64,000 nt of DNA from IMGVR_UViG_3300044796_000657:248001-312000, one strand, 5' to 3'. Shown: positions 7,780 to 54,399, counted from the stretch's first letter. Program-made: numbers and translations. The notes: generated by a model not told the origin, from the letters alone.

Positions 7780-8373
7780 TCAAACCGTATTGGAATAACC
7801 ATAACGGTTAAAATCTTCGTAAAAAACAGAGTAGACCTTATCAATCGTGACGGGGTTGGCATAATAAAGACGCCAATTCCCATACCCGTCACCGCCACTC
7901 TGTTTGCCGACTTGCTTCTCAGGCAGTTTACCTACTAAATTAAAAAATTTCAATCTTTCCCATTCACTGTTAAGATTTTCGTACGTAATAATTTTGATTG
8001 GCTTGTTAAAGTGCTTTTGTGCTTCATCAATCACCGACGATTGTACAGATAAATGAAACTTGTTATATCCACAACCACTCGCCCCCGCCCGCAACCCTTC
8101 AACGTACGCATCGAATGCTTGATGCCGAAAATCTACATCTCCGGTATCTATGTGTTTAAATACCTCAAACCACTTACTAACAGTTCGTGAAAAAGGGTTA
8201 CGAACAACAGCAAAGGCAAAATAGCCCCGCATATCACCCGTTGGCGGTTGGATACTATGATGCCCCATACCTTCGGTGCTGCCGCCGATTTTCTTTAATG
8301 TACTGGATACGGTACGGGATGCGTTTTTAGGGAGAGCCAGAAACGCTATTTTGTGTTTGCGAACAATATGCAT
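7780..8373 (-). CDS. Sulfotransferase-family protein
   Basis: LPKNASRTV (5'-PSB-like) and FAVVRNPFSRTVSKW (3'-PB-like). Confidence 0.7.
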   Translation of the reverse strand: MHIVRKHKIAFLALPKNASRTVSSTLKKIGGSTEGMGHHSIQPPTGDMRGYFAFAVVRNPFSRTVSKWFEVFKHIDTGDVDFRHQAFDAYVEGLRAGASGCGYNKFHLSVQSSVIDEAQKHFNKPIKIITYENLNSEWERLKFFNLVGKLPEKQVGKQSGGDGYGNWRLYYANPVTIDKVYSVFYEDFNRYGYSNTV

Positions 8374-8945
8374 CAGTGATATTTCTTCTTGATAATGCTG
8401 TGTTCTCTATTTATTGTCGGGCCTTTAACCTTCAAAGCATCAAGAAGTGAAACAGTATAACTGATATTGCCAAGTTTTTTGTTTGAAAATCTCTTATCGT
8501 CTATAGGTACGATAAAAATCAAATTTTCCAAGACGAGATGAGGAACCAAAATTGGGGCTTTTTGTCCCGGCGGAAGTTCAATTTCTGCTACGCCGAAATA
8601 ATTGTGTCTGCCGTGTTTGAAGAAATCAACTTCCCAACCTTCGTGGATATAGCGGGTTTTGGTAACTTGATTGGTACCCTTAGACCACAACTTGTTAAAG
8701 TCATCAACATCAATAGACGACTCTATTTCCACAACTTCGCCGGGCGTTCCACAATCCTGCTTAAATGTGAAGTAATAGCTTTTTTCACCATTAAGTTTGG
8801 ATGATCGAACACGGGCAGAGATACCACGCTCCGTTACGAGATACCTCTGTTCAATAAGAAGGATTTGCTCAGACGCTTCGGCAAACTTGCGTTCTACCTT
8901 GTCAGTTTCGTGAATGACATATTTACGTTCGTTTTCAATAGGAAT
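8373..8945 (-). CDS. CYTH-domain (triphosphate tunnel) protein, probable ATT start
   Basis: The ExERKY motif (IENERKYV) lies 71 codons upstream of the first canonical start (GTG 8732), in frame. GGAGG-7nt-ATT CCT ATT GAA gives MPIENERKY. Also KTRY, WEVDFF and AEIEL motifs. Confidence 0.8.
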   Translation of the reverse strand: MPIENERKYVIHETDKVERKFAEASEQILLIEQRYLVTERGISARVRSSKLNGEKSYYFTFKQDCGTPGEVVEIESSIDVDDFNKLWSKGTNQVTKTRYIHEGWEVDFFKHGRHNYFGVAEIELPPGQKAPILVPHLVLENLIFIVPIDDKRFSNKKLGNISYTVSLLDALKVKGPTINREHSIIKKKYH

Positions 8946-8990
8946 GGCAAGCCCTCCAAATTTAGAAGTCTCAATCGTCTTATAGTTATG

Positions 8991-9644
8991 TTAGCGAGCA
9001 GAAATTCGTCTCTTAACTGCTAGACGTTTTTCGTCATATTCACTTTGTACGAGTTTGTGAATTCCTACTCCCATCTCCCCATTATGACCAGCGAATTCAT
9101 CCACCCATCCGCCAAAATCACGAATATCAATTTTCGTATTTCCATTCATGAACTTGCGAAATGCGTCCCATGTATTATACAAATAATCGTTTTTGCGAGC
9201 TGCTTTCCAGAAATATCCATTATCGTCAGTACGACCATTATATCTTCCCTTGCGATCAACACGATAAAGTCTACCTGCCCGCAATAGAATAGTTAACAAT
9301 GTAAGTCGATTGCCTGTGCCCCAAAATTTACCGGGAACCACAGCGAGGACATACCTGTTATTCGATTTGATAAAGCGGCAACGATACTTGTAGCCAACAT
9401 GAAGAATTCTTTCGGCGTGTCGTACAAAGCCGATAATCGCTCTACGACTGTGAATATGACCAAAAGGCTTTCCTTCAGCATCTTGGTGTGCCAAAGCGTG
9501 TACGAGCCTTTTAGGTCTTGGGCAATTGGTATGGAATTGCTCACGACAAGAATGCCAAATAAGCATTTTGACGCTATTAAAGTAACCAAAATCACCACCG
9601 TTAATGCCATAAAAGCACTTCGGAATTCTGACAATTGGCTTCAT
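8991..9644 (-). CDS. Hypothetical protein, tandem paralog of 9641..10300
   Basis: Shared blocks G(D/N)FG, CRExFH, TILLRA, TWDAF..FM.G.TK, GWV..F. Confidence 0.6.
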   Translation of the reverse strand: MKPIVRIPKCFYGINGGDFGYFNSVKMLIWHSCREQFHTNCPRPKRLVHALAHQDAEGKPFGHIHSRRAIIGFVRHAERILHVGYKYRCRFIKSNNRYVLAVVPGKFWGTGNRLTLLTILLRAGRLYRVDRKGRYNGRTDDNGYFWKAARKNDYLYNTWDAFRKFMNGNTKIDIRDFGGWVDEFAGHNGEMGVGIHKLVQSEYDEKRLAVKRRISAR

Positions 9645-10300
9645 GACTTTGCTCGTTTTTTAGGAAAACAAAGATCGAAATTCGTAGAACACTTATCTCT
9701 GAATCGATGATTAACGAAATCACATACCCACCCTAAAAACTTATTAGCATAAAAACGATTTGTGACTTTTGTTTGGCCGCTCATGAATGCCTCAAAAGCA
9801 TCCCAAGTTTCTTTTAGGTAAGGCTCATGACGACAAACCGCCCAAAAATCATCACCACGATATTTGTGAAACCTCTGCGCAGCCCGCAAGAGAATAGTAA
9901 ATAAATTACTGCAGACTCTTTCGCACCAAAACTTACCCAACTCTATCGCCAAAACGTTGCGATGGTTTGTCCGTATAAAGGTACAACGCTCCGTAGACTT
10001 TAACTTCAAAATCTTTTCGGCGCAACGAATAAAAGCCTTAATGTGACGGTTTTGACGGTTTTGACATTCTTCCTCAAAATTATCACATGAAAGGGTTGCG
10101 AACAGAATTATTTGTTTGGGTTTATGACTGGCAACACATTTGCCTTTTTTATTGAATGTTAAATCAATGTACGAATGGAAGATTTCACGACACGTGTACC
10201 AATTGGTAACAGGACGAAGACCTCTCTCCGCAACAATCACCCCAAAGTTCCCCATTTGAAACTTATACGGGGATTTTGGGACTTTGATGATACGTGGCAT
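9641..10300 (-). CDS. Hypothetical protein, tandem paralog of 8991..9644
   Basis: Same shared blocks as 8991..9644. Confidence 0.6.
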   Translation of the reverse strand: MPRIIKVPKSPYKFQMGNFGVIVAERGLRPVTNWYTCREIFHSYIDLTFNKKGKCVASHKPKQIILFATLSCDNFEEECQNRQNRHIKAFIRCAEKILKLKSTERCTFIRTNHRNVLAIELGKFWCERVCSNLFTILLRAAQRFHKYRGDDFWAVCRHEPYLKETWDAFEAFMSGQTKVTNRFYANKFLGWVCDFVNHRFRDKCSTNFDLCFPKKRAKS

Positions 10301-10319
10301 GTCGCACCAATTGATTTAC

Positions 10320-10778
10320 TTAACTCGTCACTGCTTCACTGTAAGCGACTTTGATCTGCTTATCAAGCTCTGGCGACAATAACTCAATCTTGCTCCAATG
10401 TAAATCGTCTGGAATATTTTCTGCTTCTGTCCAAAAGAAGAACTCAATAATCATCTGGTATTCCGTGGCAGCAACTTCCTCAACAGTTTTGCCTTCCATG
10501 AAATCGTCCGTAATATTTAACGCTACTCTTAAAGCGTCTTCATAAATCGCACCACACAAATTCCTCAAAACCTTAATGGCCATCTCTGCGCCGGTATCCT
10601 TATTCTTAAGGAGCATATCCATAACATTCCGCTTCACCCAAGCATCGACAAAATGAGCCGTAGCACGATAGCGAGCTAAGACCTGTCCGGGTTGAGGTTT
10701 GTTTTTGCGAACATCAAAGAAGTTCTTACCGAACCAAACCTTGAATTCTTCATCAGTCATTTCATTCGGCGTCGACAT
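10320..10778 (-). CDS. Hypothetical protein
   Basis: ORF track gives 10320..10793; ATG at 10778 (MSTPNEM) preferred, following an AGGA SD. Confidence 0.5.
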   Translation of the reverse strand: MSTPNEMTDEEFKVWFGKNFFDVRKNKPQPGQVLARYRATAHFVDAWVKRNVMDMLLKNKDTGAEMAIKVLRNLCGAIYEDALRVALNITDDFMEGKTVEEVAATEYQMIIEFFFWTEAENIPDDLHWSKIELLSPELDKQIKVAYSEAVTS

Positions 10779-11055
10779 GGAATTCCTCCGCAATCTTGGC
10801 TTGCTCTGCCTTTACTTTAGCAAAATGCTCATCCAACTTGTCTTTGTTCTGCTCCTTGAACTCCATATCCTTTACCAACTGCTCTGCCATTGCTTTCAAT
10901 TTCCGATTATTGATATACAAAGCCGTATTGTAAGGGTTCACAATCGGCTTTTGCTTTGGCGGTCTTTCTAACTTGTTAACTTTTTTGATATTCTGCAAAG
11001 CCTCTCTCTGCTTCTTCAACTTTTCCTTAACTCGTTCTGCCCTCTTCTTCGCCAT
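10762..11055 (-). CDS. Basic coiled-coil hypothetical protein
   Basis: 97 aa, Lys-rich, overlaps its neighbours. Confidence 0.5.
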   Translation of the reverse strand: MAKKRAERVKEKLKKQREALQNIKKVNKLERPPKQKPIVNPYNTALYINNRKLKAMAEQLVKDMEFKEQNKDKLDEHFAKVKAEQAKIAEEFHVDAE

Positions 11056-11834
11056 TACATTCTCCTGTTTCTGATAAGTGCCGCATCTTGTGCAGCGATA
11101 ATTGAATCAATGCCACCACTTCCACCACCAATAGGCGCAGTATCAACATAACTCAACCGGCCTTCTGATACCGGCAACTGCGGATCATTCAAACCAATAC
11201 CAACCAATCCTCTTCGCATCGGCTCAAAGAACAACGAACTTACCTCAATCTTTGCACCTTGATCATCCGACACCTGATAAAAGATAGGTTCCATAGCACT
11301 GCGAACAACTTCCTTGAACACAGGATAAGGCTTATTCAAAGTCAACCTCACACCCTGTCGGCCAAGTACACCCAAATCTTCACGATTAGGACGGAACACC
11401 TCATGACGCAACGGGCCAGCCGCAATCGTCGGGCCATTAGACGTAGCAACACGACGATCCGAGAATTGTATCGGAACATTCGACGGCAATGATGGCATCA
11501 TACCATTAGAAACACTAACTGCCGGTTCTAAAACTTCCTGCGACGTAAATTCACCCTGAAGCTGGTCGTATTGGAACTTACGATTTTTGATAATACAGCC
11601 ACCTTTTGTTTCCTTGAAGGCGATTTCCCTTCTAGCAAACTCAAAAACCTCTACATTAACAATCAGGATGTCACGACGGGTCATTTCACCCATAATAGCA
11701 GCAGCAACCTTTTCCAAGGGTACTTCTTCGGTTTTACGCTTGCCAATCACTTTAGCAAAAGTTTCGGTTTCTTCAGTGTTATATTTACCATCCTCTTGTC
11801 TTGGATGATAGTGGAACAAAATTTCATATGCCAT
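11055..11834 (-). CDS. Hypothetical protein
   Basis: 259 aa, GAGGAG SD. Confidence 0.55.
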   Translation of the reverse strand: MAYEILFHYHPRQEDGKYNTEETETFAKVIGKRKTEEVPLEKVAAAIMGEMTRRDILIVNVEVFEFARREIAFKETKGGCIIKNRKFQYDQLQGEFTSQEVLEPAVSVSNGMMPSLPSNVPIQFSDRRVATSNGPTIAAGPLRHEVFRPNREDLGVLGRQGVRLTLNKPYPVFKEVVRSAMEPIFYQVSDDQGAKIEVSSLFFEPMRRGLVGIGLNDPQLPVSEGRLSYVDTAPIGGGSGGIDSIIAAQDAALIRNRRM

Positions 11835-11853
11835 TATTATTCTCCTCTTGCCT

Positions 11854-12033
11854 TTAAATAGCGAAGCCCCACCAAGTCTTTTTAGGTTCAGGGTGGATTA
11901 TCGCCTTAAGGCTTTCTTTCTTTTGTTTCGTCAATGGCATGTCTATAAATCTGACATCCAATTCCAATCTTTCACAAACCTTTTTCAGTTGTTCATATTG
12001 TTGTTTGACGATCTCTAAATCCGATGGGGTCAT
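11854..12033 (-). CDS. 59-aa hypothetical protein
   Basis: Manual translation MTPSDLEIVKQQYEQLKK...KKTWWGFAI; fills the gap in a co-oriented run. Confidence 0.45.
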   Translation of the reverse strand: MTPSDLEIVKQQYEQLKKVCERLELDVRFIDMPLTKQKKESLKAIIHPEPKKTWWGFAI

Positions 12034-12041
12034 GCATTTAG

Positions 12042-12524
12042 TTATCCTTCGCCATAAATATCTTTCAGCTTACTTTCCATATCCGACTGAGTAGAAGGCG
12101 ACGACATGACATTCTTTCCATAAAGACTGTCCATTTCCTTACGCATGTTGTAACAAAGCTCTTTTGCCGTACTATGAGCATAATCCATAGACTTCAAAAA
12201 GCCGTAAAGTTCATCCTTAACATACTCGGCCATTCTCACCCGTTCCAACAAAGCACCAACTTCTTCATCCGATTTGGCTGATGCTTCTGCCATCTTATCA
12301 CTCAAATTATGCGTTACCTTGTATTCACGCAACTTGGAATTGAATAAGACCGTATGCTGGTCGTTCAATCTCTTAGCAATAAAAGAAGCATCATTGTGCT
12401 TGTTTTGATAATACCTATGTAACGAAGCGTACTTGGTAAGAAAGTCATTGATATTCTCTTGCGAAAACTCCAATGCCTTGTCATCAAGATTAACGTCTTC
12501 TTTGCCGACTTTGACCATTCCCAT
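12042..12524 (-). CDS. UvsY-like recombination mediator
   Basis: 160-aa helical protein resembling T4 UvsY in size and pattern; next to the helicase. Confidence 0.55.
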   Translation of the reverse strand: MGMVKVGKEDVNLDDKALEFSQENINDFLTKYASLHRYYQNKHNDASFIAKRLNDQHTVLFNSKLREYKVTHNLSDKMAEASAKSDEEVGALLERVRMAEYVKDELYGFLKSMDYAHSTAKELCYNMRKEMDSLYGKNVMSSPSTQSDMESKLKDIYGEG

Positions 12525-13528
12525 TATTGTGCCTTTATTTGAAGAAACTCTTTTATCAAATCATCAATATTGTTAATATCTGAGTAGTGGATAATCAACA
12601 ATGGAATCTTTTTATCTTTAGCCCATCTACTTTTTATATGATCTCGTTTTTTTATAGCCGCCAAATTATCAATAGCATCATCACAACTTATTGTGTTAGA
12701 CCAATATACAGGAACATAATGTTGTATGCCATTATATTCAATAAGAAATTGATTTTCCTTAATGTTAACTAAAAAATCAAATGGCAACCTGTTGACACTA
12801 ATGCAATCTTCAAATGTGGCTTGCCTAATAAAAGTTAAATTTTGTTGAGACAAAAATTCAACAATCTTTTTTTCACCTCTTGATTCACAGCAAAAAGGAC
12901 AACCTCTGCCGCCAGATCGATTACATATCATCGCTTCCCATTGGTGTTCTTTAACAAAAGAACATTGCCACCAAACCTTTTTATGACTTCCTGCTGTCAC
13001 TTCATACGGCGTTATTTGATTTATGGAATGCCACTCTTGTGACAGAATTGGATGCGTTGTCGCCAAACAATTTGATTGTACAATTTTATGCGTACGACCG
13101 ACACTGCGGCAACAAGGACATCCTCTACCAGCAAGTCTTTTTACTGGACTTGCAAACCATTCGTGATCTTCAGCAACGAAACATTTCCACCAAACTTTAA
13201 TACCGCTACCAATAGTCAAATCAAACGGTGAAAAACTATTTTTCAGATGCCACTGTTTTGCTAACTCTGGCTCTTTTGTCGCAATACAATTAGACAGAGA
13301 TACTTTTTGCCCAGCACAAAAAGGACATTTCGTTTTTTCAATAACTCGTTTATTAACGGTAGTTTGCCACTCATGATCTTCGGCAGTTGAACATTTCCAC
13401 CATATTTTTTTATGACTTCCAAAGCTAATTTCAAAAGGATTTATGCCCAAATTTTTAGTCGGATGCCATTCTTTAACTATTTCTGGGTACAATTTACCGA
13501 AGCAGTTTTTATTCGTGACTTTTTTCAT
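12524..13528 (-). CDS. Zinc-ribbon-repeat protein with C-terminal PD-(D/E)xK/Vsr-like endonuclease; probable free-standing homing endonuclease
   Basis: Three KxWWxC...HEW...CP(F/C)C repeats, then SRGEKKI, LPFDF, IEYNGIQHY and IPLLII. Confidence 0.75.
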   Translation of the reverse strand: MKKVTNKNCFGKLYPEIVKEWHPTKNLGINPFEISFGSHKKIWWKCSTAEDHEWQTTVNKRVIEKTKCPFCAGQKVSLSNCIATKEPELAKQWHLKNSFSPFDLTIGSGIKVWWKCFVAEDHEWFASPVKRLAGRGCPCCRSVGRTHKIVQSNCLATTHPILSQEWHSINQITPYEVTAGSHKKVWWQCSFVKEHQWEAMICNRSGGRGCPFCCESRGEKKIVEFLSQQNLTFIRQATFEDCISVNRLPFDFLVNIKENQFLIEYNGIQHYVPVYWSNTISCDDAIDNLAAIKKRDHIKSRWAKDKKIPLLIIHYSDINNIDDLIKEFLQIKAQ

Positions 13529-14964
13529 TGAATTTCAATTTTTTTAGGCTCTACATTACCCGCTTTAGCTTTTCTATAATTGGTTAAGTGCATTTGCATT
13601 TCCTCTTTGGGAATTTCCGACATTAACAAAGTACCCGTATTCATCTTATAGTGAATTTCTTGCCTACTAATGCCGTCTCTATGTTTGATAGCAAACAAAC
13701 TACCAACATTACAACCAGATTCAGGTTTATTCAAAGACCAAATAGCATCCATCGGTCGAGCTTGACCAAAACTGTCGGCCATTGCATCATCATCGATATG
13801 CCCTTCAAAGTCCTGCGCCTCACGACCCTTGCGGTTAGCCTGAATAGCCGTCAATGTACAATGTAGCTCTTCCTGTCCAAAGGCACGCATTTCACGAACC
13901 AGCAATTGACGACTCTCGTAAGTCTTCATGCCGTGGATGTCTTTCAATTCACCGACGTAATCCACGCAAATCAAATCAGGCTTGAAACCATACAATCCCA
14001 ACTGAGAAACATACGCCCGGAAAGTATTAATGTCGGCAGAACCACCCGGATAATGCTTGATAATCAACTGACGAGTATCTTCATCATGCTTAACGTGCTC
14101 AAGAATTGCCTGCTTGACAATATTTTGATCCTGCAAAAGCATCTTGAATTCAGTATTGGAAAGCAAGGAGTCAAATCGTTTGGCGATCTTGTCTTGGCTC
14201 ATTTCCAACGTGATATACAAAACTTTCTTACTCAAAAGAAGGTTAGATGCTGCGGCGTTAATAAGGGCAATGGACTTACCGGCACCCGACAAACCTACGA
14301 AACAGCCGATTTCACCACGGGATAAACCCTTGGACGTAAGCATTTGATCGATGCCCTTGAAGCCGGAAGTAAAGATTTCCTTACCTGCCAACTCTTCTTG
14401 CATCCGCTGGTAACGTTCATCGAGGGTATTGAAATAATCCAATCCCAAGTCTTGACTCTTTTCGGTAGTTAACGCACTTCGCCACAAATCCCAAATCTTT
14501 CCATAAGGATCTTTGTCAGCTTTAATGAGATCGATGGTTTGGTGAACTGCGATCTTGATGGCTTGCTTCTTGGCGAAGTCGCAAACCTTGTCCATCAAGT
14601 AGTCACGGGTTAACGACCCCGGAACATAAGACATCAAAATCGCTTCCAATTCACCTAAGTGCAGGAAGAGGTGTTCTTTGTTCTTGCAACGTTCTTTGAG
14701 TTCTTGTTGTACGTAGGCTTTGTTTGGAAGTTGTTTGTATTGTCCGAAGAAATCAAAGACGATCTTACAAATGAGTTCGTGGGATAAGTCGCCGAAATAA
14801 GTCGGCTTCAACAAACTGAGACATTGAACCAGAAAGTGTCTGTCAGTTAACAGAACCGCAACGATTTGTTTGTCTATCTCGTAAGAATGGTCAAAATGGG
14901 CTTCTTCTTTTTTTTCCTGTATCAAACTATGAACTAACGCCTTGTCTTTATCACTAATCTGCAT
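13525..14964 (-). CDS. Replicative SF4 helicase, T4 gp41/DnaB-like
   Basis: Walker A GLSGAGKS, YITLEMS, Walker B ICVDY, TAIQANR, ADSFG, KHRDG. Confidence 0.9.
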   Translation of the reverse strand: MQISDKDKALVHSLIQEKKEEAHFDHSYEIDKQIVAVLLTDRHFLVQCLSLLKPTYFGDLSHELICKIVFDFFGQYKQLPNKAYVQQELKERCKNKEHLFLHLGELEAILMSYVPGSLTRDYLMDKVCDFAKKQAIKIAVHQTIDLIKADKDPYGKIWDLWRSALTTEKSQDLGLDYFNTLDERYQRMQEELAGKEIFTSGFKGIDQMLTSKGLSRGEIGCFVGLSGAGKSIALINAAASNLLLSKKVLYITLEMSQDKIAKRFDSLLSNTEFKMLLQDQNIVKQAILEHVKHDEDTRQLIIKHYPGGSADINTFRAYVSQLGLYGFKPDLICVDYVGELKDIHGMKTYESRQLLVREMRAFGQEELHCTLTAIQANRKGREAQDFEGHIDDDAMADSFGQARPMDAIWSLNKPESGCNVGSLFAIKHRDGISRQEIHYKMNTGTLLMSEIPKEEMQMHLTNYRKAKAGNVEPKKIEIQ

Positions 14965-14967
14965 AAT

Positions 14968-15213: not shown

Positions 15214-15217
15214 GTCA

Positions 15218-15223
15218 TATATA
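15218..15223 (-). promoter_or_regulatory. TATATA box variant
   Basis: TATATA-tgac-ATG(15213). Confidence 0.35.
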
Positions 15224-15228
15224 GCAGC

Positions 15229-15477: not shown

Positions 15478-15488
15478 TTTGGTGCTCC

Positions 15489-36200: not shown

Positions 36201-36509
36201 ATGTTAGAACTTACCGAAGATACGTTTAAGGCCGAAATAGAAAACCATGCAGGTTTAGCAATTGTAGATTTTTACACGCCTGCTTGTGCTCCGTGTCGTG
36301 TACTCGCACCGGTGTTCAAGGCATCGGCAGATAAGCATGTCGCAATCAAGCACGCCAAAATTGAACCTAGCAATGCACAGACTACCTTTGTGAATTTCGG
36401 CGTTAACTATGTGCCGACCTTGATTTTGTTCAAGGACGGTAAAGAACTTGCCCGCAAGGGATTTATGAACGCTGCTGAATTGGATGCTTGGTTGGAGCAA
36501 GCTCATTAA
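36201..36509 (+). CDS. Thioredoxin
   Basis: VDFYTPACAPC, VPTLILFKDGKE. Confidence 0.85.
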   Translation: MLELTEDTFKAEIENHAGLAIVDFYTPACAPCRVLAPVFKASADKHVAIKHAKIEPSNAQTTFVNFGVNYVPTLILFKDGKELARKGFMNAAELDAWLEQAH

Positions 36510-37074
36510 GTTCAAGTGTATTGTTGCTGATCCACCGTGGCCTTATAAATCAAGCGATTTGAAATCTTCCCCCGAACATAGACCCAATAGTTGGAATACA
36601 CCATTGGGTAGTGTTAGCTCGATATATCGTTATGGTTCCATGTCTTTGAAGGAATTGGGTGAATTGGCGGTCAAGAGCAAGGCGGAAGATAATGCCCATT
36701 TGTATTTGTGGGTTACGAACAGTTTTATGGTTGAAGCACATCAATTGGCCCGTCAGTGGGGCTTTGAGCCGAAGACGATTATTACTTGGGTTAAGAAGAA
36801 AGCGGATGGTACCCCGTCTATGAAGATGGGGTATTATTATCGTGGGGCTACTGAACACGCTTTGTTTTGCGTACGAGGCAGTTTGAGGTTAAAAGGCCCG
36901 CCACATCCTACAGCGTTTGAGACGCCTAGATTGCCGCACAGCATGAAACCTGATTACTTTTATGAAATGGTAGAGAAACAATCCGAGGGACCGTACCTCG
37001 AATTGTTCTCACGCAAGAAGAGAGAGAGATGGGCAATTTGGGGAAATGAATTGCCCAATGATGTTCAAGTTTAA
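36484..37074 (+). CDS. MT-A70-family adenine methyltransferase (alternative ATT start at 36505)
   Basis: IVADPPW, HLYLWVTN, WGF..KT.ITWVK, TEHALF, HSMKPD, YLELFSR. Confidence 0.9.
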   Translation: MLGWSKLIKFKCIVADPPWPYKSSDLKSSPEHRPNSWNTPLGSVSSIYRYGSMSLKELGELAVKSKAEDNAHLYLWVTNSFMVEAHQLARQWGFEPKTIITWVKKKADGTPSMKMGYYYRGATEHALFCVRGSLRLKGPPHPTAFETPRLPHSMKPDYFYEMVEKQSEGPYLELFSRKKRERWAIWGNELPNDVQV

Positions 37075-48234: not shown

Positions 48235-48237
48235 ATA
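48231..48237 (+). promoter_or_regulatory. ATAAATA late-promoter-like box
   Basis: ATAAATA-agat-ATG(48242). Confidence 0.55.
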
Positions 48238-48241
48238 AGAT

Positions 48242-49051
48242 ATGGATTCTTTTAGTCGTTTTATTATTAGCGAAGGTGTCAATATCACGGCATCACCTGA
48301 GTTAGCAGATCAAATTCCTCAAGCGAAAAAAGCGTTGATGCTATATTTGCAGCGATATGGCGATAAGCAAGAACTCAAAGCGAGTATGGCACGCTTCAAG
48401 TATACTTTAACAAAAGTTCGTCAAGACGACTGGAACAATGAAGTAACATATCATTTCACAAATGATACGATTGACAAAGGCAAAGGTCGGGATGAGATTA
48501 TTAGCGACAAATCAGATGATCGGTATGAGTATTATCCAAATTGGGATGGTCGCACGGGGAAAAGGGTTTATAAGAGTCCCAAGGATGCTATTGATTCCAT
48601 TCCGAATGATGAGAATTTAGCTTATCGTGGTATGAGTTGGGAAGAGTGGCGAAGTATTCAGAAAACGGGCATTATCCAGAGTAAAGGTCAACATAATTTC
48701 AGCAATCAAGGATCGTTAACATTTTTCGGCCCCAAGTCTTCAACGGGTGAAAGTTATGCGGGCGGTTTTGCGCCGAATGCTTATTCACCTACGCCTGTTC
48801 GTCCGGGTGTTGTGATTGCGGTTCCCAAGAATCTTCTCAAAACACCAAAAGACAATCCTAATATTCCTCAAGGCGAGTTGGCTTTTGAGGGAACGATGGA
48901 TGCCAAGAATATTGTGAATGCTTGGATGTTGGTTGCCACGAAGACGAAACCGGGGAAATTTGATGTTGTTTTTAACTTAAAAACCAACCAAGTGCGTGAA
49001 GGTTCGAGAATGTCTATCAGTGTGTCGTATTCAATTCGTCAAATCAAGTAA
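48242..49051 (+). CDS. Putative ADP-ribosyltransferase-fold protein with capsid-targeting-like N-terminus
   Basis: MDSFSRFIISE; LAYRGMS.EE...I..TG; LTFFGPKSSTGESYA; QGELAF. Confidence 0.45.
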   Translation: MDSFSRFIISEGVNITASPELADQIPQAKKALMLYLQRYGDKQELKASMARFKYTLTKVRQDDWNNEVTYHFTNDTIDKGKGRDEIISDKSDDRYEYYPNWDGRTGKRVYKSPKDAIDSIPNDENLAYRGMSWEEWRSIQKTGIIQSKGQHNFSNQGSLTFFGPKSSTGESYAGGFAPNAYSPTPVRPGVVIAVPKNLLKTPKDNPNIPQGELAFEGTMDAKNIVNAWMLVATKTKPGKFDVVFNLKTNQVREGSRMSISVSYSIRQIK

Positions 49052-49058
49052 GTCTATC

Positions 49059-49065
49059 ATAAATA
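49059..49065 (+). promoter_or_regulatory. ATAAATA late-promoter-like box
   Basis: ATAAATA-caat-ATG(49070). Confidence 0.55.
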
Positions 49066-49069
49066 CAAT

Positions 49070-49282
49070 ATGACAGAATACGAGTTAACGTGGGTTCGTC
49101 CCAATTTGACAAAATCTTATGATAGATTGGCAGAATTGGAACGCAAGTTGGCTTTTTTCGAAGCAATGGAATCGATAGCTGCTCTTACACCCAGAACTTA
49201 TACCTTATCAAAAAATTCTTCATTGTCGGATTTGTATGCCGAAGTTGATAGGTTAACTGAAATCAAACAAAGGTTGCTATGA
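49070..49282 (+). CDS. Hypothetical protein
   Basis: 70-aa ORF. Confidence 0.45.
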   Translation: MTEYELTWVRPNLTKSYDRLAELERKLAFFEAMESIAALTPRTYTLSKNSSLSDLYAEVDRLTEIKQRLL

Positions 49283-49605
49283 ATTTTACATATGTTGCAA
49301 CTGGCGTAGTTAAGACTCACGGTTGTTTTGACATGGAGTTTGATTTTTTCTTTGTCGCCCTCTATCCAGTGGGATCGGTAGCGTACGATAAAATATCTGC
49401 CAAACGTGGCAGGATGGAAGCCGTTTCAATTAAGAGGGTGGAATTTGTAGGTTGCGACCACCACCCACTTTATACCGATAATCTGAATACCGTTTATACA
49501 GAAAGTGATTTGGTTTCTCATGACGAGGCCAAAAATTTAGCGATTGCTTATTACAATCGCTTGATCAATCAAGCCAATAATGCTATTGAGTTGCGGAATT
49601 GTTAA
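49279..49605 (+). CDS. Hypothetical protein
   Basis: 108-aa ORF, coupled. Confidence 0.5.
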   Translation: MNFTYVATGVVKTHGCFDMEFDFFFVALYPVGSVAYDKISAKRGRMEAVSIKRVEFVGCDHHPLYTDNLNTVYTESDLVSHDEAKNLAIAYYNRLINQANNAIELRNC

Positions 49606-49813
49606 CAGCGTTTGGGCTTTGAGTGACGTTGGGGTTTTGAAATTCAACGCTGATAATGCAGTTGGAGGTGGCCGGAAAGGCGTGCTTTGTAAGGCCGTCT
49701 TGTAGATATTTGATGATTTCCAGCACGCTGCCGGAAACTTCAACCCCCCACGATGCTTGGTTAGCTTGGACTGTTTCTTGTTGGTTTTTCCATTCATCAA
49801 ATTTAATAAGCAT
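49583..49813 (-). CDS. Small protein with capsid-targeting-like N-terminus
   Basis: Internal ATG at 49813 gives MLIKFDEWKNQQE. Confidence 0.45.
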   Translation of the reverse strand: MLIKFDEWKNQQETVQANQASWGVEVSGSVLEIIKYLQDGLTKHAFPATSNCIISVEFQNPNVTQSPNAVNNSATQ

Positions 49814-49820
49814 TATATTC

Positions 49821-50087
49821 TCAATTAAAAGGGTTAGCTTCTTGTGGGGTTTCAATTCGCATTTTCTTACCATCGAGATCGTATTTGATACTGACTTGCT
49901 GTACTGGCAAAGTAGTTTCTTCACCGTCCAACATGCTCAATTCGTGTTCGATCTTCAACCAGTGGCAGCGGTCGTTGGGTTTAACTTTTAATTCCAAGTA
50001 TTCCCCTGCATGAACCACGGTTACGTTACAAACGCCTTCTTCGGCATTATACATCGCACAATTCTTACAGATTTTCTTTTTTAACAT
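49821..50087 (-). CDS. Small Cys-rich protein
   Basis: ATG at 50087; CKNC..YN...GVC...C. Confidence 0.5.
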   Translation of the reverse strand: MLKKKICKNCAMYNAEEGVCNVTVVHAGEYLELKVKPNDRCHWLKIEHELSMLDGEETTLPVQQVSIKYDLDGKKMRIETPQEANPFN

Positions 50088-50235
50088 TTTTCTTCTTCTT
50101 TTTATCATCGGACAAAATTACGGGCTTTGGATACATTCTGCCTACTGATCCGCCGATAGGTCTGGCGAAGTTGGCAATATCCCCTGTACTTGTCATAGTT
50201 TCTTCGATGTTTTTTAACCATTCTCTAAAAGTCAT
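50065..50235 (-). CDS. 56-aa protein with capsid-targeting-like N-terminus
   Basis: Not in the track: MTFREWLKNIEETMTSTGDIANFARPIGG...KKKKKNVKKENL; TAATG overlap with the upstream gene. Confidence 0.6.
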   Translation of the reverse strand: MTFREWLKNIEETMTSTGDIANFARPIGGSVGRMYPKPVILSDDKKKKKNVKKENL

Positions 50236-50708
50236 TACATTCCTCCCATTGGTGGACCGCCGCCTCCGGTCGGACCAGCCAAAGTGTTACCCTGTGATTT
50301 CCATTGTACTCCACCGGAAGCCCCGGCGAAATCTGCTCCTTGATAATTAGGCGGTTCCATCAATTTCAGGAACGTATCACGTGTCATTGTGATTGATTTT
50401 TTGCCCAAATTATCAGCCGTGTCCAAATCTAATTCATCATCAATATCGTCGCCATTACCATCTTTATCCAAAGCCGCATAGGGAATTGGTTTGATGGTAA
50501 CCGTATGACTATCAAAGTCAGTGACGTAGAAAGCCGCCGGTTGGCGAATTAAGTGTCCGCCCAACTTAACATTGCTCAATGTGATCGGCATACCGAACCA
50601 CAACTTTTTTGGAACTTTGAGTTGTTTTTTGATCGTAGAAACGTAGCTGTCAGGAGCTTCCGCTTTTTTCTCTACAAACAATTTAAACCCAACTAGCAAA
50701 TTTGACAT
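50235..50708 (-). CDS. Hypothetical protein with capsid-targeting-like N-terminus
   Basis: MSNLLVGFKLFVE; Gly/Pro/Met tail; TAAATA upstream. Confidence 0.55.
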   Translation of the reverse strand: MSNLLVGFKLFVEKKAEAPDSYVSTIKKQLKVPKKLWFGMPITLSNVKLGGHLIRQPAAFYVTDFDSHTVTIKPIPYAALDKDGNGDDIDDELDLDTADNLGKKSITMTRDTFLKLMEPPNYQGADFAGASGGVQWKSQGNTLAGPTGGGGPPMGGM

Positions 50709-50712
50709 ACTC

Positions 50713-50718
50713 TATTTA
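50713..50718 (-). promoter_or_regulatory. TAAATA late-promoter-like box
   Basis: TAAATA-gagt-ATG(50708). Confidence 0.55.
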
Positions 50719-50728
50719 CACCTTGGGT

Positions 50729-50736
50729 TATAAATA
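50729..50736 (+). promoter_or_regulatory. TATAAATA, exact T4 late promoter consensus
   Basis: TATAAATA-gact-ATG(50741). Confidence 0.6.
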
Positions 50737-50740
50737 GACT

Positions 50741-52105
50741 ATGAAATTTAAGTCTTGGATTGCGGAAACTCTGAATTTTGATTCTCCTCAAAGGGCAGGC
50801 ATGCAAACGCACCCTTTGGTTACAGGTGCTACAGTTGGTTTAGAGATAGAATTAATGACCCTCTCAATTCCTTACAAGGAATTTACACCTTTAATGTTAG
50901 CAAGGGCGTTATGGGATGCTGATGATTATAAATTTGATGTTCAACAACGAATGAGATTGAATGCTGAATCTGAATATGATGATGATGAAGATTTGGATAT
51001 GCGAGATTTGATTAACTGGGTTACGATGAATAAAAAAGAGGCTTACGATTATTTCAAACAACATCTTGAAAGTGGCCAGTTGAACTTAGGTAAAACCAGT
51101 ACGGATTGGAAAGACGAAGTTGTTAAGTATTGGTCTAAACACTTTATGAAAGCTATTGAGGCGGGAGGGTTTAAGGCTTTTTATGGTGCGCAATCTACGA
51201 AAGACTCTTGGGCTGTTGGCGATGATGGTCACGATACTATGTACCATATCCCCATCTTGGAAATGAGGAGTTCCGTTATTCCTTATGCGGCGTTGCCAAA
51301 TCTTCAAAAAGCGTTAACTGCGATTGCCGAAGTAATCAAAAACAATCCAGAAGATTTAATGGTTCAAAACAATACTGGTATCCACATTCACGTTGGTAAT
51401 GCACGGACTGGCGATTTGAATGCCAAGGGCTGGCGTGGCGATCATATGGACATGTTTAGCCGGTTAGCCGCTGCCACTCATACGGACGAAGACAGCATTT
51501 GGGATACGATGTCAAAACACGATAGGGATTTTTCTCAATTCGCTATGCTTAACAGACAGCAGGATTTTGAACAGACCCGGAGCGGGTACGGAAGTGCTCA
51601 CAATGATATTATCAACCAACTGAACAACTTAAGGTACAAGAAAGAACCGACGATAACGGTCAGCAACAAAGACTTGTGGAACCGGGTCAAGCCCGACCGT
51701 AAGAGTGGAACAAGTGTCGTTTCAGAGCATCCGACAGTAGAATACCGACACTTTACATCGCAGGTGTTGATGGAGGCTGATGGCGTAGAAAAGATTATGG
51801 CGTGGATCAAGTATTTCGTTGATAATGCCGCTTCGCAAGTCAATAAAAATAGGATCAAGTTTGAGAATGACGAAGAGCGTATTATTCTGACGAAGTTGCC
51901 AAAGGATATGGTAAGAATTGACTTCCAAGACAAAGGATCAAAAGCTAGAATTCCGCAACCCGGTATGCCAAGGGATGCGTTGATGGCGACTCCCAAGAGT
52001 GGGGTACGGGATACCGATCAAGGGTTCAAGCATTGGTGGGATAGATTAACGTGGCAGCAAAAGGCTCAGTACAGAAAAGACAAGGGCAGACCGCCTCTTG
52101 TTTAA
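50741..52105 (+). CDS. Amidoligase-like protein with capsid-targeting-like N-terminus
   Basis: MKFKSWIAE; TVGLEIE, W.VGDDG, LEMRS, NTGIHIHVG, TVEYRHF. Confidence 0.7.
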   Translation: MKFKSWIAETLNFDSPQRAGMQTHPLVTGATVGLEIELMTLSIPYKEFTPLMLARALWDADDYKFDVQQRMRLNAESEYDDDEDLDMRDLINWVTMNKKEAYDYFKQHLESGQLNLGKTSTDWKDEVVKYWSKHFMKAIEAGGFKAFYGAQSTKDSWAVGDDGHDTMYHIPILEMRSSVIPYAALPNLQKALTAIAEVIKNNPEDLMVQNNTGIHIHVGNARTGDLNAKGWRGDHMDMFSRLAAATHTDEDSIWDTMSKHDRDFSQFAMLNRQQDFEQTRSGYGSAHNDIINQLNNLRYKKEPTITVSNKDLWNRVKPDRKSGTSVVSEHPTVEYRHFTSQVLMEADGVEKIMAWIKYFVDNAASQVNKNRIKFENDEERIILTKLPKDMVRIDFQDKGSKARIPQPGMPRDALMATPKSGVRDTDQGFKHWWDRLTWQQKAQYRKDKGRPPLV

Positions 52106-52332
52106 AAGTCGCCACAACAAGGCTCAGATTCCATTTTCTTAATGGTTTCCAAGAGTATGCCGCCGTACGGATCAATATTACACGTAAACGAATCATTAAC
52201 GTCAATGTTGTAGGCTTCTAGGAACAAATGATGTACAAGTATCTGCGCCAATGGCTCAGTAGACCACGGGCAGCATACCATCAAATCGTCCAATTGCTCA
52301 GTTACGGTAAAGGTATCTTCTTGTATTGTCAT
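52102..52332 (-). CDS. Hypothetical protein
   Basis: 76-aa ORF. Confidence 0.4.
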   Translation of the reverse strand: MTIQEDTFTVTEQLDDLMVCCPWSTEPLAQILVHHLFLEAYNIDVNDSFTCNIDPYGGILLETIKKMESEPCCGDF

Positions 52333-52341
52333 TCAAGTAGT

Positions 52342-53199
52342 TTAACCAATAAAATCAGAAATTCTACTCAAGACTTCTTTCCAATTACCCAATTCTTTTT
52401 GTCGCCATATTTTCATGGTGGGATACCAAATACTGTCACCGGAACCCCATCGCCAATCATGCTGATAAGCCAAAGCCAAATGTACTGTTTTTCCCATCGC
52501 TGCTGCCAAATGAGCAACAGCCGTATCAACACTGACTACAGTATGACATTCCGCTATCAGTTTGGCTGTATCATTCAAGTCTGCCAACATTAGAGAATAA
52601 TCTTCGAATCTTAAGTCGGATTGTGTGACCATTAAACTTGTTAATTTTCTTCCATCCTTAACTAATAAACTAAAATCTTCTGCTGAGGATGACCTGATGC
52701 TGTCATCGGCGTGACCTGCAAATCCTGTCCATGCCACACCAATTCTCCCTTGGTCGTTATTGGGAATGTTAATGTACTGTTCGTTGATGATTGTTTTGAA
52801 GTGAGCGGGTAAACTGGAAACTGGAATTACAAAGTTGCAATTCGGCAAAGCATCACCACGAACTATTACGTCATAACCTTGGTTTTTCATCAAGTGAAAC
52901 AGTTCAGGTGCAACTTCCAATACGACATTTGACATTAAGTCTGTATATCGTACCCACATGATAAAATCGCCGAAACCTTGATCTTGGTAAACGAGAACTT
53001 TTCCTTGTTCACCTTTCCATGTTGGCATCGGGTAATGACTTCGTCTGTTAATTGTTGAGCGATGACCTTTGAGTCGCCATTCCAATTCAGGCCACGCTTC
53101 TTGCCATCTTCCCAAATAACCCAATACACATCCATATCGCCAATGAAGTTCGGCATCATTAGGGTTTTTGAAAATTTGATCTTCGAGATCTTTGAGCAT
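52342..53199 (-). CDS. TPR-associated GT9-like glycosyltransferase
   Basis: GRWQEAWPELEWR, DQGFGDFIMWVRY, GVAWTG, VSVDTAVAHLAAAMGK, DWRW, WYPTMKIWRQ. Confidence 0.8.
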   Translation of the reverse strand: MLKDLEDQIFKNPNDAELHWRYGCVLGYLGRWQEAWPELEWRLKGHRSTINRRSHYPMPTWKGEQGKVLVYQDQGFGDFIMWVRYTDLMSNVVLEVAPELFHLMKNQGYDVIVRGDALPNCNFVIPVSSLPAHFKTIINEQYINIPNNDQGRIGVAWTGFAGHADDSIRSSSAEDFSLLVKDGRKLTSLMVTQSDLRFEDYSLMLADLNDTAKLIAECHTVVSVDTAVAHLAAAMGKTVHLALAYQHDWRWGSGDSIWYPTMKIWRQKELGNWKEVLSRISDFIG

Positions 53200-53741
53200 T
53201 AACTATTTTTTTTACGAGTGGGCTTGTAATGAATAATAGCGTCCGAATCTGGGTATTTATTTTGCCATCCCATGCTGGCGTACCAAGCCTTCAATTTTTG
53301 TGTACTTAGTCCTTTGGGCGGCTTTTGGCCTTTAACTTTAGCGGGCGTTATTTCTTGGGGTTCGGCAACTAAAGTTATTCCCAATTTATTTGCGACACTT
53401 TGCAACCATTTCAGAGATGATGTTGCCAATCCTTTGCCACGTGCTTCTGGCTTAACAATAATTGCGGCAACTGTTAATTGTTTTGATTGCTTTGGGTCAT
53501 ATCCGGCAACCATTACCCTATTCTGATAAAGGTATAGGTCGTATTCTGATAATGCAATCTTCACATTTCCGTCTGGACTAACGATTGTAGGGTAATTTGT
53601 GCCACCCAATGAGACGACTTCGGGATTAGTACCCGGAATTAATCGATTAGATGGTGCTTCCCACCGCCAACCTTGTTTTTCAATTTCAGAACGCAAACTG
53701 ACAAATGGGTGTGCGGCTTCAATGAATAATCTAAAACTCAT
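53199..53741 (-). CDS. GNAT acetyltransferase with capsid-targeting-like N-terminus
   Basis: MSFRLFIE; IIVKPEARGKGLAT (motif A); LKAWYASMGW. Confidence 0.75.
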   Translation of the reverse strand: MSFRLFIEAAHPFVSLRSEIEKQGWRWEAPSNRLIPGTNPEVVSLGGTNYPTIVSPDGNVKIALSEYDLYLYQNRVMVAGYDPKQSKQLTVAAIIVKPEARGKGLATSSLKWLQSVANKLGITLVAEPQEITPAKVKGQKPPKGLSTQKLKAWYASMGWQNKYPDSDAIIHYKPTRKKNS

Positions 53742-53745
53742 CTTC

Positions 53746-53751
53746 TATATA
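53746..53751 (-). promoter_or_regulatory. TATATA box variant
   Basis: TATATA-gaag-ATG(53741). Confidence 0.4.
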
Positions 53752-53856
53752 TTGCTCGTAAAAATTAACTTTTACTTCAAGTTCCATCAAAAAGACGGAT
53801 AAAAATTTTTTGGTCGAGACTAACTATTACGTTATCTATAAAGTGAGGGTAGTACC

Positions 53857-54399
53857 ATTCCGATTTTATCCACTGATCTTTTGTTCAAATACTCAACAAC
53901 GACTGGGTCTGCCGGAAATACGACGGCTCAAGGCAATCCTAATAATGCGCTCGGAAAATATATTTCTACAACGCAATGGACGGGTGGTACCTTAAATGAC
54001 TTGTTTGACGACATTACGGGTGATGAAAACGCCAACTCGATTGTTGATTACCGCTGTATTTTCCTTCATAACAACCACGGATCGTTAACTTTGTTGAGTC
54101 CTAAGTTATGGATTGCTTCCGAAGTTTCTGGTGGTGCCAATATCGCTCTTGGTGTTGATACGACCGCCGCTTCTGTTATCGGTGCTTCGTCCGCTCAAGG
54201 TTTGACGATTGCCGATGAAACTACGGCTCCTTCCGGTGTTTCATTCAGTAGCCCAACTACCAAATCTGCTGGCCTTTCACTCGGTGACATTCCAGCCGGT
54301 CAATGTAAGGCATTCTGGTTCCGTCGCACGGCAACCAATAGTGCTGCTTTGAATAACGATGGCGTAACGGTACAAATTGAAGGCGATACGAGTGCGTAA
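53857..54399 (+). CDS. Probable virion structural protein (beta-rich), probable ATT start
   Basis: In-frame stop at 53839; GAGG-GTAGTACC-ATT gives MPILSTDLLFKYS; VDYRCIFLHN, FWFRRT. ORF track starts at TTG 53881. Confidence 0.6.
   Translation: MPILSTDLLFKYSTTTGSAGNTTAQGNPNNALGKYISTTQWTGGTLNDLFDDITGDENANSIVDYRCIFLHNNHGSLTLLSPKLWIASEVSGGANIALGVDTTAASVIGASSAQGLTIADETTAPSGVSFSSPTTKSAGLSLGDIPAGQCKAFWFRRTATNSAALNNDGVTVQIEGDTSA

What the first reader, a model, noticed from the sequence alone, without database searches (positions are those of the whole stretch)
8373..53881. Apparent ATT (AUU) start codons in two, possibly three, genes
Seen: (a) In the CYTH gene, the essential ExERKY motif lies 71 codons upstream of any ATG/GTG/TTG; GGAGG-7nt-ATT at 8945 (-) gives MPIENERKY. 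(b) In the gene at 53857 (+), GAGG precedes ACC-ATT CCG ATT, giving MPILSTDLLFKYS just after an in-frame stop. (c) Weaker: MT-A70 has GGAG-7nt-ATT at 36505, giving MKFKCIVADPPW and overlapping the thioredoxin stop, but an ATG exists 7 codons upstream. Cases a and b share the context CC-ATT-CC(T/G)-ATT. Known: AUU initiation is rare in bacteria (E. coli infC, pcnB) and is policed by IF3, which also disfavours leaderless mRNA. Inference: repeated AUU use plus many near-leaderless genes suggests that initiation fidelity is relaxed during infection or that the host tolerates AUU.
Basis: partly seen in the sequence, partly recalled or inferred. Interest (0 to 1): 0.78.

Follow-up and report, generated by a model that had tools for sequence, protein, structure and literature searches.

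The report
AUU start codons in phage genes
Two genes of this 430-kb phage really do have ATT where all their relatives have the start codon. One of them belongs to an enzyme family (CYTH) that has switched from ATG to ATT many separate times while staying functional, so the weak start looks like deliberate low-level expression rather than an error.

Summary
In the CYTH gene (a) and the phrog_13135 gene (b), ATT sits exactly where every homologue has its start codon. An in-frame stop lies just upstream, and a good Shine-Dalgarno (SD) lies 7 nt upstream.

**(a) CYTH.** The ATT is also present in an independently assembled RNA-library contig from another sample, so it is not an assembly error. 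It is a family trait. Among 118 distinct CYTH homologues read from DNA, 15 have a near-cognate codon at the conserved start (11 ATT, 2 ATC, 1 ATA, 1 CTG).
- The switch arose at least 7-12 times.
- These members have stronger SDs than the canonical ones.
- dN/dS between pairs that both carry such a start is 0.04-0.14.
- Two control families show 0/75 and 0/39 non-canonical starts.

**(b) phrog_13135.** This is a rare case. Relatives at 80-88% identity use ATG or GTG. One other member, at 76% identity, uses ATC.

**(c) MT-A70.** This stays ambiguous. ATT sits at the family's commonest start position, but an in-frame ATG lies 7 codons upstream.

- SD-ATT is not enriched in the genome.
- No phage tRNA looks like an AUU-reading initiator.
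- The phage-encoded IF3 does not track with ATT use.

The best reading is gene-specific translational limitation of the infC/pcnB kind.

The parts
8373..8945 (-). CYTH/TTM-like gene read from the ATT start. It encodes 190 aa, and the stop TGA overlaps the ATG of the next gene.
   Evidence: Translation. 21 homologues begin MPIENERK exactly here. The family profile matches PDB 2FBL (NeuTTM) at 1.5e-8 and 3TYP at 9e-9.
8943..8945 (-). ATT at the conserved start-codon position of the CYTH gene.
   Evidence: It is identical in an independent RNA-library contig and a Logan DNA contig.
8952..8957 (-). Shine-Dalgarno GGAGGG, with 7 nt between GGAGG and the ATT.
   Evidence: The duplex energy with the anti-SD is -9.8 kcal/mol, in the top 4% of this genome's ATG genes.
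8991..8993 (-). TAA, the stop of the upstream ORF. It is in frame with CYTH and lies 45 nt before the ATT.
8991..9644 (-). Upstream ORF of 217 aa with no Pfam or PHROG match. It is a paralogue of ORF 9641..10300, and homologues precede CYTH in 4 other loci.
8730..8732 (-). First canonical in-frame start (GTG), used by the source's gene call (119 aa). That product lacks the ExExK motif and half of the domain.
   Evidence: (P0003).
53857..54399 (+). Gene of family phrog_13135 (function unknown) read from the ATT. It encodes 180 aa.
   Evidence: The PHROG profile begins at the ATT. KVP40.0353 and F86_0348 begin MPI at this codon. 11 IMG/VR loci have ATG or GTG here.
53857..53859 (+). ATT at the conserved start-codon position of gene (b).
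53845..53849 (+). Shine-Dalgarno GAGGG, 7 nt before the ATT.
   Evidence: The duplex energy is -8.3 kcal/mol, in the top 12.5% of this genome's ATG genes and typical of its family.
53839..53841 (+). In-frame TAA, 5 codons before the ATT of (b).
53881..53883 (+). Alternative canonical start TTG, used by the source's gene call (172 aa). It has no SD (-4.1 kcal/mol) and would remove the invariant I3 and D7.
   Evidence: P0169.
36484..37074 (+). MT-A70 DNA methyltransferase gene. The start is either ATG 36484 or ATT 36505.
   Evidence: Pfam PF05063 at 5e-25. Homologue N-termini.
36505..36507 (+). ATT at the family's commonest start position. It overlaps the thioredoxin stop (ATTAA).
   Evidence: The closest IMG/VR homologue, L019, has GTG exactly here. 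25 of 117 homologues have 8 residues before DPPW, as the ATT would give.
36494..36497 (+). GGAG, 7 nt before ATT 36505. ATG 36484 has no SD (-1.0 kcal/mol).

Best explanation
The CYTH gene is translated from the AUU at 8945. Ordinary initiator tRNA reads it with a third-position mismatch, and a strong SD at optimal spacing recruits the ribosome. Ribosomes finishing the upstream ORF 45 nt away probably help as well.

The weak codon keeps the enzyme at a low level relative to its operon neighbours. It should also make synthesis sensitive to IF3, as in E. coli infC and pcnB.

This is a property of the gene family. Phage CYTH genes have repeatedly exchanged ATG for ATT or ATC, strengthened their SD, and stayed under purifying selection.

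Gene (b) most likely also starts at its AUU (53857), as a rarer, lineage-specific case of the same kind. For the methyltransferase (c), the ATT may be a second start beside the upstream ATG.

- **Shown:** codon identity, homologue alignment, recurrence, SD compensation and selective constraint.
- **Inferred:** that fMet is inserted at AUU, that output is low, and that IF3 matters.
For: **Alignment with homologues.** The start codon of homologues falls on the ATT.
- (a).
- (b).

**The sequence is real.**

**Family census from DNA.**
- IMG/VR, 42 distinct loci: ATT 5, ATC 1, CTG 1.
- Metagenome contigs, searched with patterns that do not touch residue 1, 75 distinct loci: ATT 4, ATA 1.
- Two genes called as truncated also qualify: L026 (ATT) and L025 (ATC).
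- None has an in-frame canonical start after the upstream stop, except one TTG in L196.
- There are no second-position mutants and no broken ORFs.

**Controls.**
- Family (b): 0/75 (Fisher p=0.0005 and 0.004).
- The downstream neighbour gene in the same loci: 0/39 against 8/39 for CYTH (p=0.005).

**SD pairing.**
- -10.5 against -6.2 kcal/mol (p=0.00025).
- Replicated at -8.2 against -5.9 kcal/mol (p=0.008).
- Nearest ATG relatives have weaker SDs.

**Phylogeny.** Parsimony needs 12 changes, and at least 7 are forced by well-supported branches.

**Retention under constraint.**
- L046, L047 and L048 are 76-92% identical. L196 and L199 are 60% identical and both carry ATT.
- dN/dS is 0.04-0.14, with dS from 0.65 to above 1.6.

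**Coupling layout.**
- An upstream ORF stops 1-51 nt before the start in 9 of 10 loci.
- L048 and L057 have TGA-NNN-ATY, like the E. coli thrS-infC junction UAA GGU AUU (PMC3592434).

**Known efficiency.** In an E. coli reporter, AUU gave 6-8-fold less product than AUG or GUG (PMC3592434).
Against: - There is no protein-level or ribosome-profiling evidence for any of these genes.
- The host is unknown and nothing is cultured.
- For (b), a TTG lies 8 codons downstream. Close relatives (80-88% identical) all keep a canonical start, so a recent start-loss cannot be excluded. Its reads were not checked.
- For (c), an in-frame ATG is available.
- The SD and 'CC' statistics are not corrected for phylogeny.
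- IMG/VR and JGI contigs overlap in part. Sequences were de-duplicated only by identity.
Confidence: 0.75

Rival explanations
1. Start-codon loss. The ATT codons are disabling mutations, and the genes are silent or make truncated products from GTG 8732 or TTG 53881.
For: - ATT is a single G-to-T step from ATG.
- The closest relatives of (b) (80-88% identical) all have canonical starts.
- The source's gene caller chose the downstream starts (P0003 and P0169).
Against: - For (a), a 119-aa product would lack ExExK and half of the domain.
- The same change recurs at least 7 times. Only near-cognate codons appear, and there is no nonsense or frameshift lesion in 118 sequences.
- SDs are stronger, not decayed.
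- dN/dS is 0.04-0.14 between pairs that both carry such starts.
- For (b), the TTG has no SD and would delete the invariant I3 and D7.
Confidence: 0.12
2. Genome-wide relaxed start-codon fidelity. The phage's own IF3 and IF1, or its host, lets AUU be used broadly.
For: - The genome encodes IF3 (81 bits) and IF1 (88 bits).
- Three genes in one genome have ATT at the family start position.
Against: - SD-ATT is at background level.
- Only 1 of about 25 orthologue starts is non-canonical.
- Phages with ATT-start CYTH occur with and without IF3, as do ATG-start ones.
- Neighbouring genes in ATT-CYTH loci are all canonical.
Confidence: 0.08
3. Read-through fusion. CYTH is made as a C-terminal extension of the upstream ORF by read-through of the in-frame TAA, so it needs no start codon.
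For: - The upstream stop is in frame in the window.
- It is in frame in 6 of 9 non-canonical loci, against an expected one third (p=0.04).
Against: - Three loci are out of frame. One is L046, the 92%-identical sister of L048, which has the same layout with TGA inside the SD.
- A read-through fusion would not need the strengthened SD at start-codon spacing.
- Homologues are stand-alone proteins of about 180 aa.
- No suppressor tRNA was found.
Confidence: 0.04
4. Sequencing or assembly error (ATG misread as ATT).
For: The window comes from a metagenome assembly. Site (b) was not checked against reads.
Against: - Site (a) is identical in Logan's own assembly and in an RNA-library contig from another sample.
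- The same codon recurs in many unrelated assemblies.
Confidence: 0.02

Closest known systems
E. coli infC (IF3) AUU start
   Same: - A near-cognate AUU start with an SD.
- The gene is the second cistron, placed just after the upstream stop. The thrS-infC junction is UAA GGU AUU, and L048 and L057 have TGA-NNN-ATY.
- The weak codon limits output.
   Different: - infC autoregulates because its product is IF3. Here the product is a CYTH enzyme, so any IF3 dependence would be sensing, not feedback.
- IF3 dependence was not tested.
- In the window the gap to the upstream stop is 45 nt, not 3.
E. coli pcnB (poly(A) polymerase I) AUU start (Binns & Masters 2002, as cited in PMC3592434)
   Same: An enzyme is kept at a low level by an inefficient AUU start. 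This is the closest functional analogy to what is proposed for CYTH.
   Different: - pcnB is a single chromosomal case.
- Here the AUU or AUC state arose many times within one phage family, together with SD strengthening.
- Toxicity of CYTH when over-made is only inferred.
Streptomyces sigR GTC start repressed by IF3 (PMC5472188)
   Same: A non-canonical start codon is used as a translational control point.
   Different: The codon, the organism and the protein are all different. It is a regulatory sigma factor rather than a phage enzyme.
NeuTTM / CYTH triphosphate tunnel metalloenzymes (PDB 2FBL, 3TYP)
   Same: - The N-terminal ExExK lies directly after the start codon.
- Paired R.R, ExE and K.R motifs are conserved along the alignment.
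   Different: - This is a phage-specific clade that Pfam's CYTH model barely detects.
- The substrate is unknown.
- In 33 loci it sits after a ferritin-like gene, and in 39 loci before a conserved 105-aa gene.

Membership tests
Genes initiated at a near-cognate AUU (infC/pcnB kind) | No canonical start codon is available in frame at or upstream of the conserved N-terminus. | tested here: met
   - (a): no canonical start between TAA 8993 and GTG 8732.
- (b): none between TAA 53839 and TTG 53881.
- (c): not met, because ATG 36484 exists.
Genes initiated at a near-cognate AUU (infC/pcnB kind) | The start codon of homologues aligns with the AUU. | tested here: met
   - (a).
- (b).
- (c): the closest homologue and the commonest N-terminal length agree with the ATT.
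Genes initiated at a near-cognate AUU (infC/pcnB kind) | A Shine-Dalgarno lies at functional spacing. | tested here: met
   - GGAGG, GAGGG and GGAG each lie 7 nt upstream.
- Duplex energies are -9.8, -8.3 and -5.6 kcal/mol.
Genes initiated at a near-cognate AUU (infC/pcnB kind) | The protein product begins with (f)Met decoded at the AUU. | not testable with these tools
   This needs N-terminal proteomics, toeprinting or initiation profiling.
Genes initiated at a near-cognate AUU (infC/pcnB kind) | Expression is reduced relative to AUG and is repressed by IF3. | not testable with these tools
   This is inferred from E. coli data only (PMC3592434).
CYTH / triphosphate tunnel metalloenzyme | An N-terminal ExExK signature. 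| tested here: met
   The sequence reads I-P-I-E-N-E-R-K. E19, E21 and K23 are invariant in 22 sequences.
CYTH / triphosphate tunnel metalloenzyme | Significant sequence match to characterised members. | tested here: met
   - The family profile matches 2FBL at 1.5e-8 and 3TYP at 9e-9 over the whole domain.
- Pfam PF01928 matches only 4 of 22 members (best E-value 1.8e-4) and not the window protein itself.
CYTH / triphosphate tunnel metalloenzyme | An eight-stranded beta-barrel tunnel fold. | not tested
MT-A70 methyltransferase | A Pfam MT-A70 domain with the DPPW motif. | tested here: met
   PF05063 at 5e-25, matching residues 10-189. DPPW is present.
phrog_13135 (function unknown) | A full-length profile match. 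| tested here: met
   E-value 3.5e-29, covering profile positions 1-182 of 182 and starting at the ATT.

The most novel reading that the evidence does not exclude
A near-cognate AUU or AUC start, together with a strengthened SD and a 'CC' at -2/-1, is a convergently evolved translational control element in phage CYTH genes. By itself it sets a low, IF3-sensitive output for an enzyme that is harmful or wasteful in excess. The CC context would be a previously unrecognised determinant of AUU initiation in bacteria.
Probability: 0.25. Interest if true: 0.8.

Novelty: new member of a known kind. Interest (0 to 1): 0.6.

Why it matters
Natural AUU starts are very rare; E. coli has two textbook cases.

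This phage enzyme family carries AUU or AUC starts in roughly 7-17% of members. They have many independent origins, compensating SDs and clear purifying selection. That makes the family a natural experiment on how start-codon strength is tuned. It also gives ready-made initiation regions for testing IF3 discrimination and sequence context.

There is a practical consequence too. Gene callers truncate these genes. In the protein database searched here, the window genome's own calls for all three genes are truncated: 119, 172 and 144 aa (P0003, P0169, P0049). For CYTH the call removes the catalytic motif.

Tried and rejected
- **Nucleotide search against phage records:** no match.
- **CYTH search in the closest relative's contig (G001):** the gene is absent there.
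- **A phage initiator tRNA that reads AUU:** none of the three CAT tRNAs or the two Ile tRNAs has initiator features.
- **Link to phage IF3:** no association. The starts of four phage IF3 genes are ambiguous. In the window genome, GGAG lies 1 nt before an ATG and 7 nt before an ATT two codons later.
- **Avoidance of the CATG restriction site as a driver:** rejected, because 26% of ATG starts here follow a C.
- **Other SD-near-cognate candidates in the genome (17135, 66247, 95608, 147684, 341989, 116116):** none is convincing.
- **Promoter and terminator scans around both sites:** nothing found.
- **Two MT-A70 homologues called as truncated (P0072, P0160):** both have usable GTG or ATG starts, so they give (c) no support.
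- **Automatic start-column control on neighbouring families:** too noisy. It was redone by motif anchoring.
- **Structure prediction:** unavailable.
- **PDB profile search for family (b):** no match.
Full report
**Setting**

The window is bases 248001-312000 of a single 430,229-bp virus record (43% GC) from a peat metagenome. IMG/VR classes the record as a provirus, and CheckV estimates it at 97% complete. The window genome's own predicted proteins are recorded on a 614,480-bp contig.

It is a huge phage. It carries 37 tRNAs, a tmRNA, IF1, IF3 and a TyrRS. No annotated phage record matches it at the nucleotide level.

**The observation**

All three sites are as described.

*(a) CYTH*
- On the minus strand, the upstream ORF (8991..9644) ends with TAA at 8993-8991, in the same frame as CYTH.
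- Fifteen codons later come GGAGGG (8957-8952), a spacer, and ATT (8945-8943), followed by P-I-E-N-E-R-K-Y.
- The first ATG, GTG or TTG is GTG 8732, 71 codons further on.
- In my own gene set of 661 ORFs, this gene is the one clear outlier for a long, coding-looking 5' extension without a canonical start.

*(b) phrog_13135*
- The order is TAA 53839-41, GAGGG 53845-49, seven bases, then ATT 53857-59 and P-I-L-S-T-D-L.
- A TTG follows at 53881.

*(c) MT-A70*
- The order is GGAG, seven bases, then ATT 36505-07.
- The ATT overlaps the thioredoxin stop (ATTAA).
- ATG 36484 lies seven codons upstream in frame.

**Do homologues start there? Yes.**

*(a)*
- Sinorhizobium phage Phosso, an uncultured 595-kb phage and 21 database proteins all begin M(or V)-P-(I/V/T)-E-N-E-x-K on that codon.

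*(b)*
- The PHROG profile begins on the ATT.
- The KVP40 and F86 proteins begin MPI there.
- 11 IMG/VR loci have ATG (9) or GTG (2) at that codon. These include the closest relative: 80% identical, on a syntenic 54-kb contig.

*(c)*
- The closest IMG/VR homologue has GTG with an AGGAG SD exactly on the ATT position.
- Among 117 close homologues, the commonest N-terminal length before DPPW is 8 residues (25 proteins, for example MKFKCIVADPPW). That is what the ATT would give.
- The length given by the ATG (15 residues) occurs 4 times.
- The ATG has no SD (-1.0 kcal/mol, against -5.6 for the ATT).
- (c) remains undecidable from sequence.

**Is the sequence right?**

Logan's own DNA contig, and a 901-nt contig from an RNA library of a different sample and study (8897..9797), match the window without any difference across both the ATT and the TAA.

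**The main result: the ATT of CYTH is a family trait**

Three database homologues were called as short proteins. One is merely cut off by its contig end (L027). The other two lack a canonical start:
- L026 reads TAA-GGAGAG-six A-ATT-CCA-ATA-GAA.
- L025 reads GAGGTGA-TTT-ATC-GCT-ATA-GAA.

I then read the start position directly from DNA, independently of gene calls.

| Source | Distinct sequences | ATG | GTG | TTG | ATT | ATC | ATA | CTG |
|---|---|---|---|---|---|---|---|---|
| IMG/VR | 42 | 31 | 3 | 1 | 5 | 1 | 0 | 1 |
| JGI/ENA metagenome contigs (search patterns did not include residue 1) | 75 | 64 | 3 | 3 | 4 | 0 | 1 | 0 |

- Adding the window, L025, L026 and the two annotated phage records gives 118 distinct sequences.
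- Of these, 15 have a near-cognate start: 11 ATT, 2 ATC, 1 ATA and 1 CTG.
- None has a canonical in-frame start after the upstream stop, apart from one TTG in L196.
- No sequence has a second-position change, and none has a broken frame.

*Controls*
- Family (b), sampled the same way, gives 0 of 75. Fisher p is 0.0005 against the IMG/VR set and 0.004 against the pooled set.
- The conserved 105-aa gene just downstream of CYTH in the same loci gives 0 of 39, although 8 of those loci have a non-canonical CYTH start (p=0.005).

The effect therefore belongs to the gene, not to the phages or their hosts.

**These starts are functional**

1. *SD pairing is stronger in the non-canonical members.*
   - It is -10.5 against -6.2 kcal/mol (p=0.00025).
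   - In the independent metagenome set it is -8.2 against -5.9 (p=0.008).
   - Each ATT member has a better SD than its nearest ATG relatives.
2. *The state arose many times.* Parsimony needs 12 changes, and at least 7 are forced by well-supported branches.
3. *The state is kept over long divergence.*
   - L047, L046 and L048 are 76-92% identical and carry ATT, ATT and ATC.
   - L196 and L199 are 60% identical and both carry ATT.
   - dN/dS is 0.04-0.14 while synonymous sites are near saturation.

A dead gene would not behave like this.

**Layout**

- In 9 of 10 non-canonical loci, an upstream same-strand ORF ends 1-51 nt before the start.
- In L048 and L057 the stop is the TGA inside GGTGA, three bases before ATY. 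This is the arrangement of the E. coli thrS-infC junction (UAA GGU AUU; PMC3592434).
- In that paper, AUU gave 6-8-fold less reporter than AUG or GUG, and about half of second-cistron translation came from re-initiation.
- In 33 loci the upstream gene is a ferritin-like protein. In the window it is one of two paralogous 217/219-aa ORFs without family matches.

**What it is and how it works**

The CYTH family profile matches NeuTTM (2FBL, 1.5e-8) and 3TYP over the whole domain. The ExExK signature sits directly behind the start codon. A product starting at GTG 8732 would therefore be inactive.

I infer that the AUU, read by ordinary initiator tRNA, keeps this enzyme at a low level within its operon. 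It probably also makes its synthesis inversely sensitive to IF3, as in infC and pcnB. The low output and the IF3 dependence are inferred, not shown.

**Gene (b)**

- Relatives at 80-88% identity keep a canonical start.
- One member at 76% identity (L252) has AAGGAGGTG-TACC-ATC-CCA-ATA and no canonical start until 11 codons later. So (b) is not unique either, only much rarer.
- The TTG alternative lacks an SD and would remove the invariant I3 and D7.
- I put AUU initiation at about 0.6 for (b) and about 0.85 for (a).

Genome-wide relaxed fidelity finds no support.
- SD-ATT is at background (2.9% against 2.8%, with ATG at 17.7%). 'Clean' SD-ATT sites number 3 against 1.6 expected.
- Only 1 of about 25 orthologue starts differs from canonical.
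- No phage tRNA has initiator features with an AUU-reading anticodon.
- Among complete related phages, IF3 is present or absent irrespective of the CYTH start codon.

**Unexplained**

- 'CC' directly before the start occurs in 7 of 15 non-canonical CYTH genes against 5 of 103 canonical ones (p=7e-5, not corrected for phylogeny).
- It is mostly absent from their nearest ATG relatives.
- The window's (b) and L252 have it too, but in family (b) it is common with ATG as well (13/70).
- I know of no mechanism for this.

**Literature**

Full-text searches found no report of AUU starts in phage CYTH genes.

**Verdict**

The mechanism is of a known kind (translational limitation by a near-cognate start). 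The family-wide, convergent pattern appears to be new.

Noticed in passing
G000:C1:223482-223730 (-) and G000:C1:94731-94928 (-), outside the window: The phage encodes a full-length IF3 (174-aa ORF, IF3_C 81 bits) and an IF1 (88 bits). At the IF3 start, GGAG lies 1 nt before an ATG and 7 nt before an in-frame ATT two codons later, so an infC-like AUU start is conceivable. IF3 genes of three related phages gave no clear pattern.
   Followed up: partly
G000:C1:399874-399948, outside the window: ARAGORN calls a tRNA with a four-base anticodon (ggaa) next to a run of Thr tRNAs. The genome also has 37 tRNAs, a tmRNA, and both tRNA-Ile(GAT) and tRNA-Ile(TAT).
   Followed up: no
CYTH loci L028-L247 (for example L028:173-610 and L003:2022-2336): In many phages CYTH sits in a conserved three-gene block. 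A ferritin-like protein (PF00210, 1.5e-14) lies upstream in 33 loci. A roughly 105-aa protein with a conserved H-x-H-P-x-R-R motif, and no Pfam or PHROG match, lies downstream in 39 loci. The window has different neighbours.
   Followed up: partly
window 8994-9644 (-) and 9641-10300 (-): Two tandem paralogous ORFs (217 and 219 aa) lie upstream of CYTH. They have no Pfam or PHROG match, and homologues precede CYTH in four other contigs (L032, L169, L171, L172).
   Followed up: partly
window 5603-6760 (-) and 7780-8373 (-): A phage-encoded tyrosyl-tRNA synthetase (PF00579, 6.6e-62) and a sulfotransferase-like protein (PF03567, 2.3e-12) lie just downstream of CYTH. The CYTH stop overlaps the sulfotransferase ATG (TGATG).
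   Followed up: no
window 8373-8732, 53881-54399 and 36640-37074: In the protein database searched here, all three genes of this genome are recorded as truncated calls: 119 aa (P0003), 172 aa (P0169) and 144 aa (P0049). The MT-A70 call even omits the DPPW motif, although an ATG was available.
   Followed up: yes
window 7400-10400: Contigs from a metatranscriptome library of a different peat sample cover most of this stretch at 100% identity. Word depth is lower over CYTH (2-6) than over the upstream ORFs (15). Contig depth is a poor measure of expression, and DNA carry-over cannot be excluded.
   Followed up: partly
L252 (ENA contig k141_2512069), positions about 250-300: A second member of family (b) lacks a canonical start. 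It reads AAGGAGGTG-TACC-ATC-CCA-ATA, and it shares the GTACC-ATY-CC context with the window's gene (b).
   Followed up: partly
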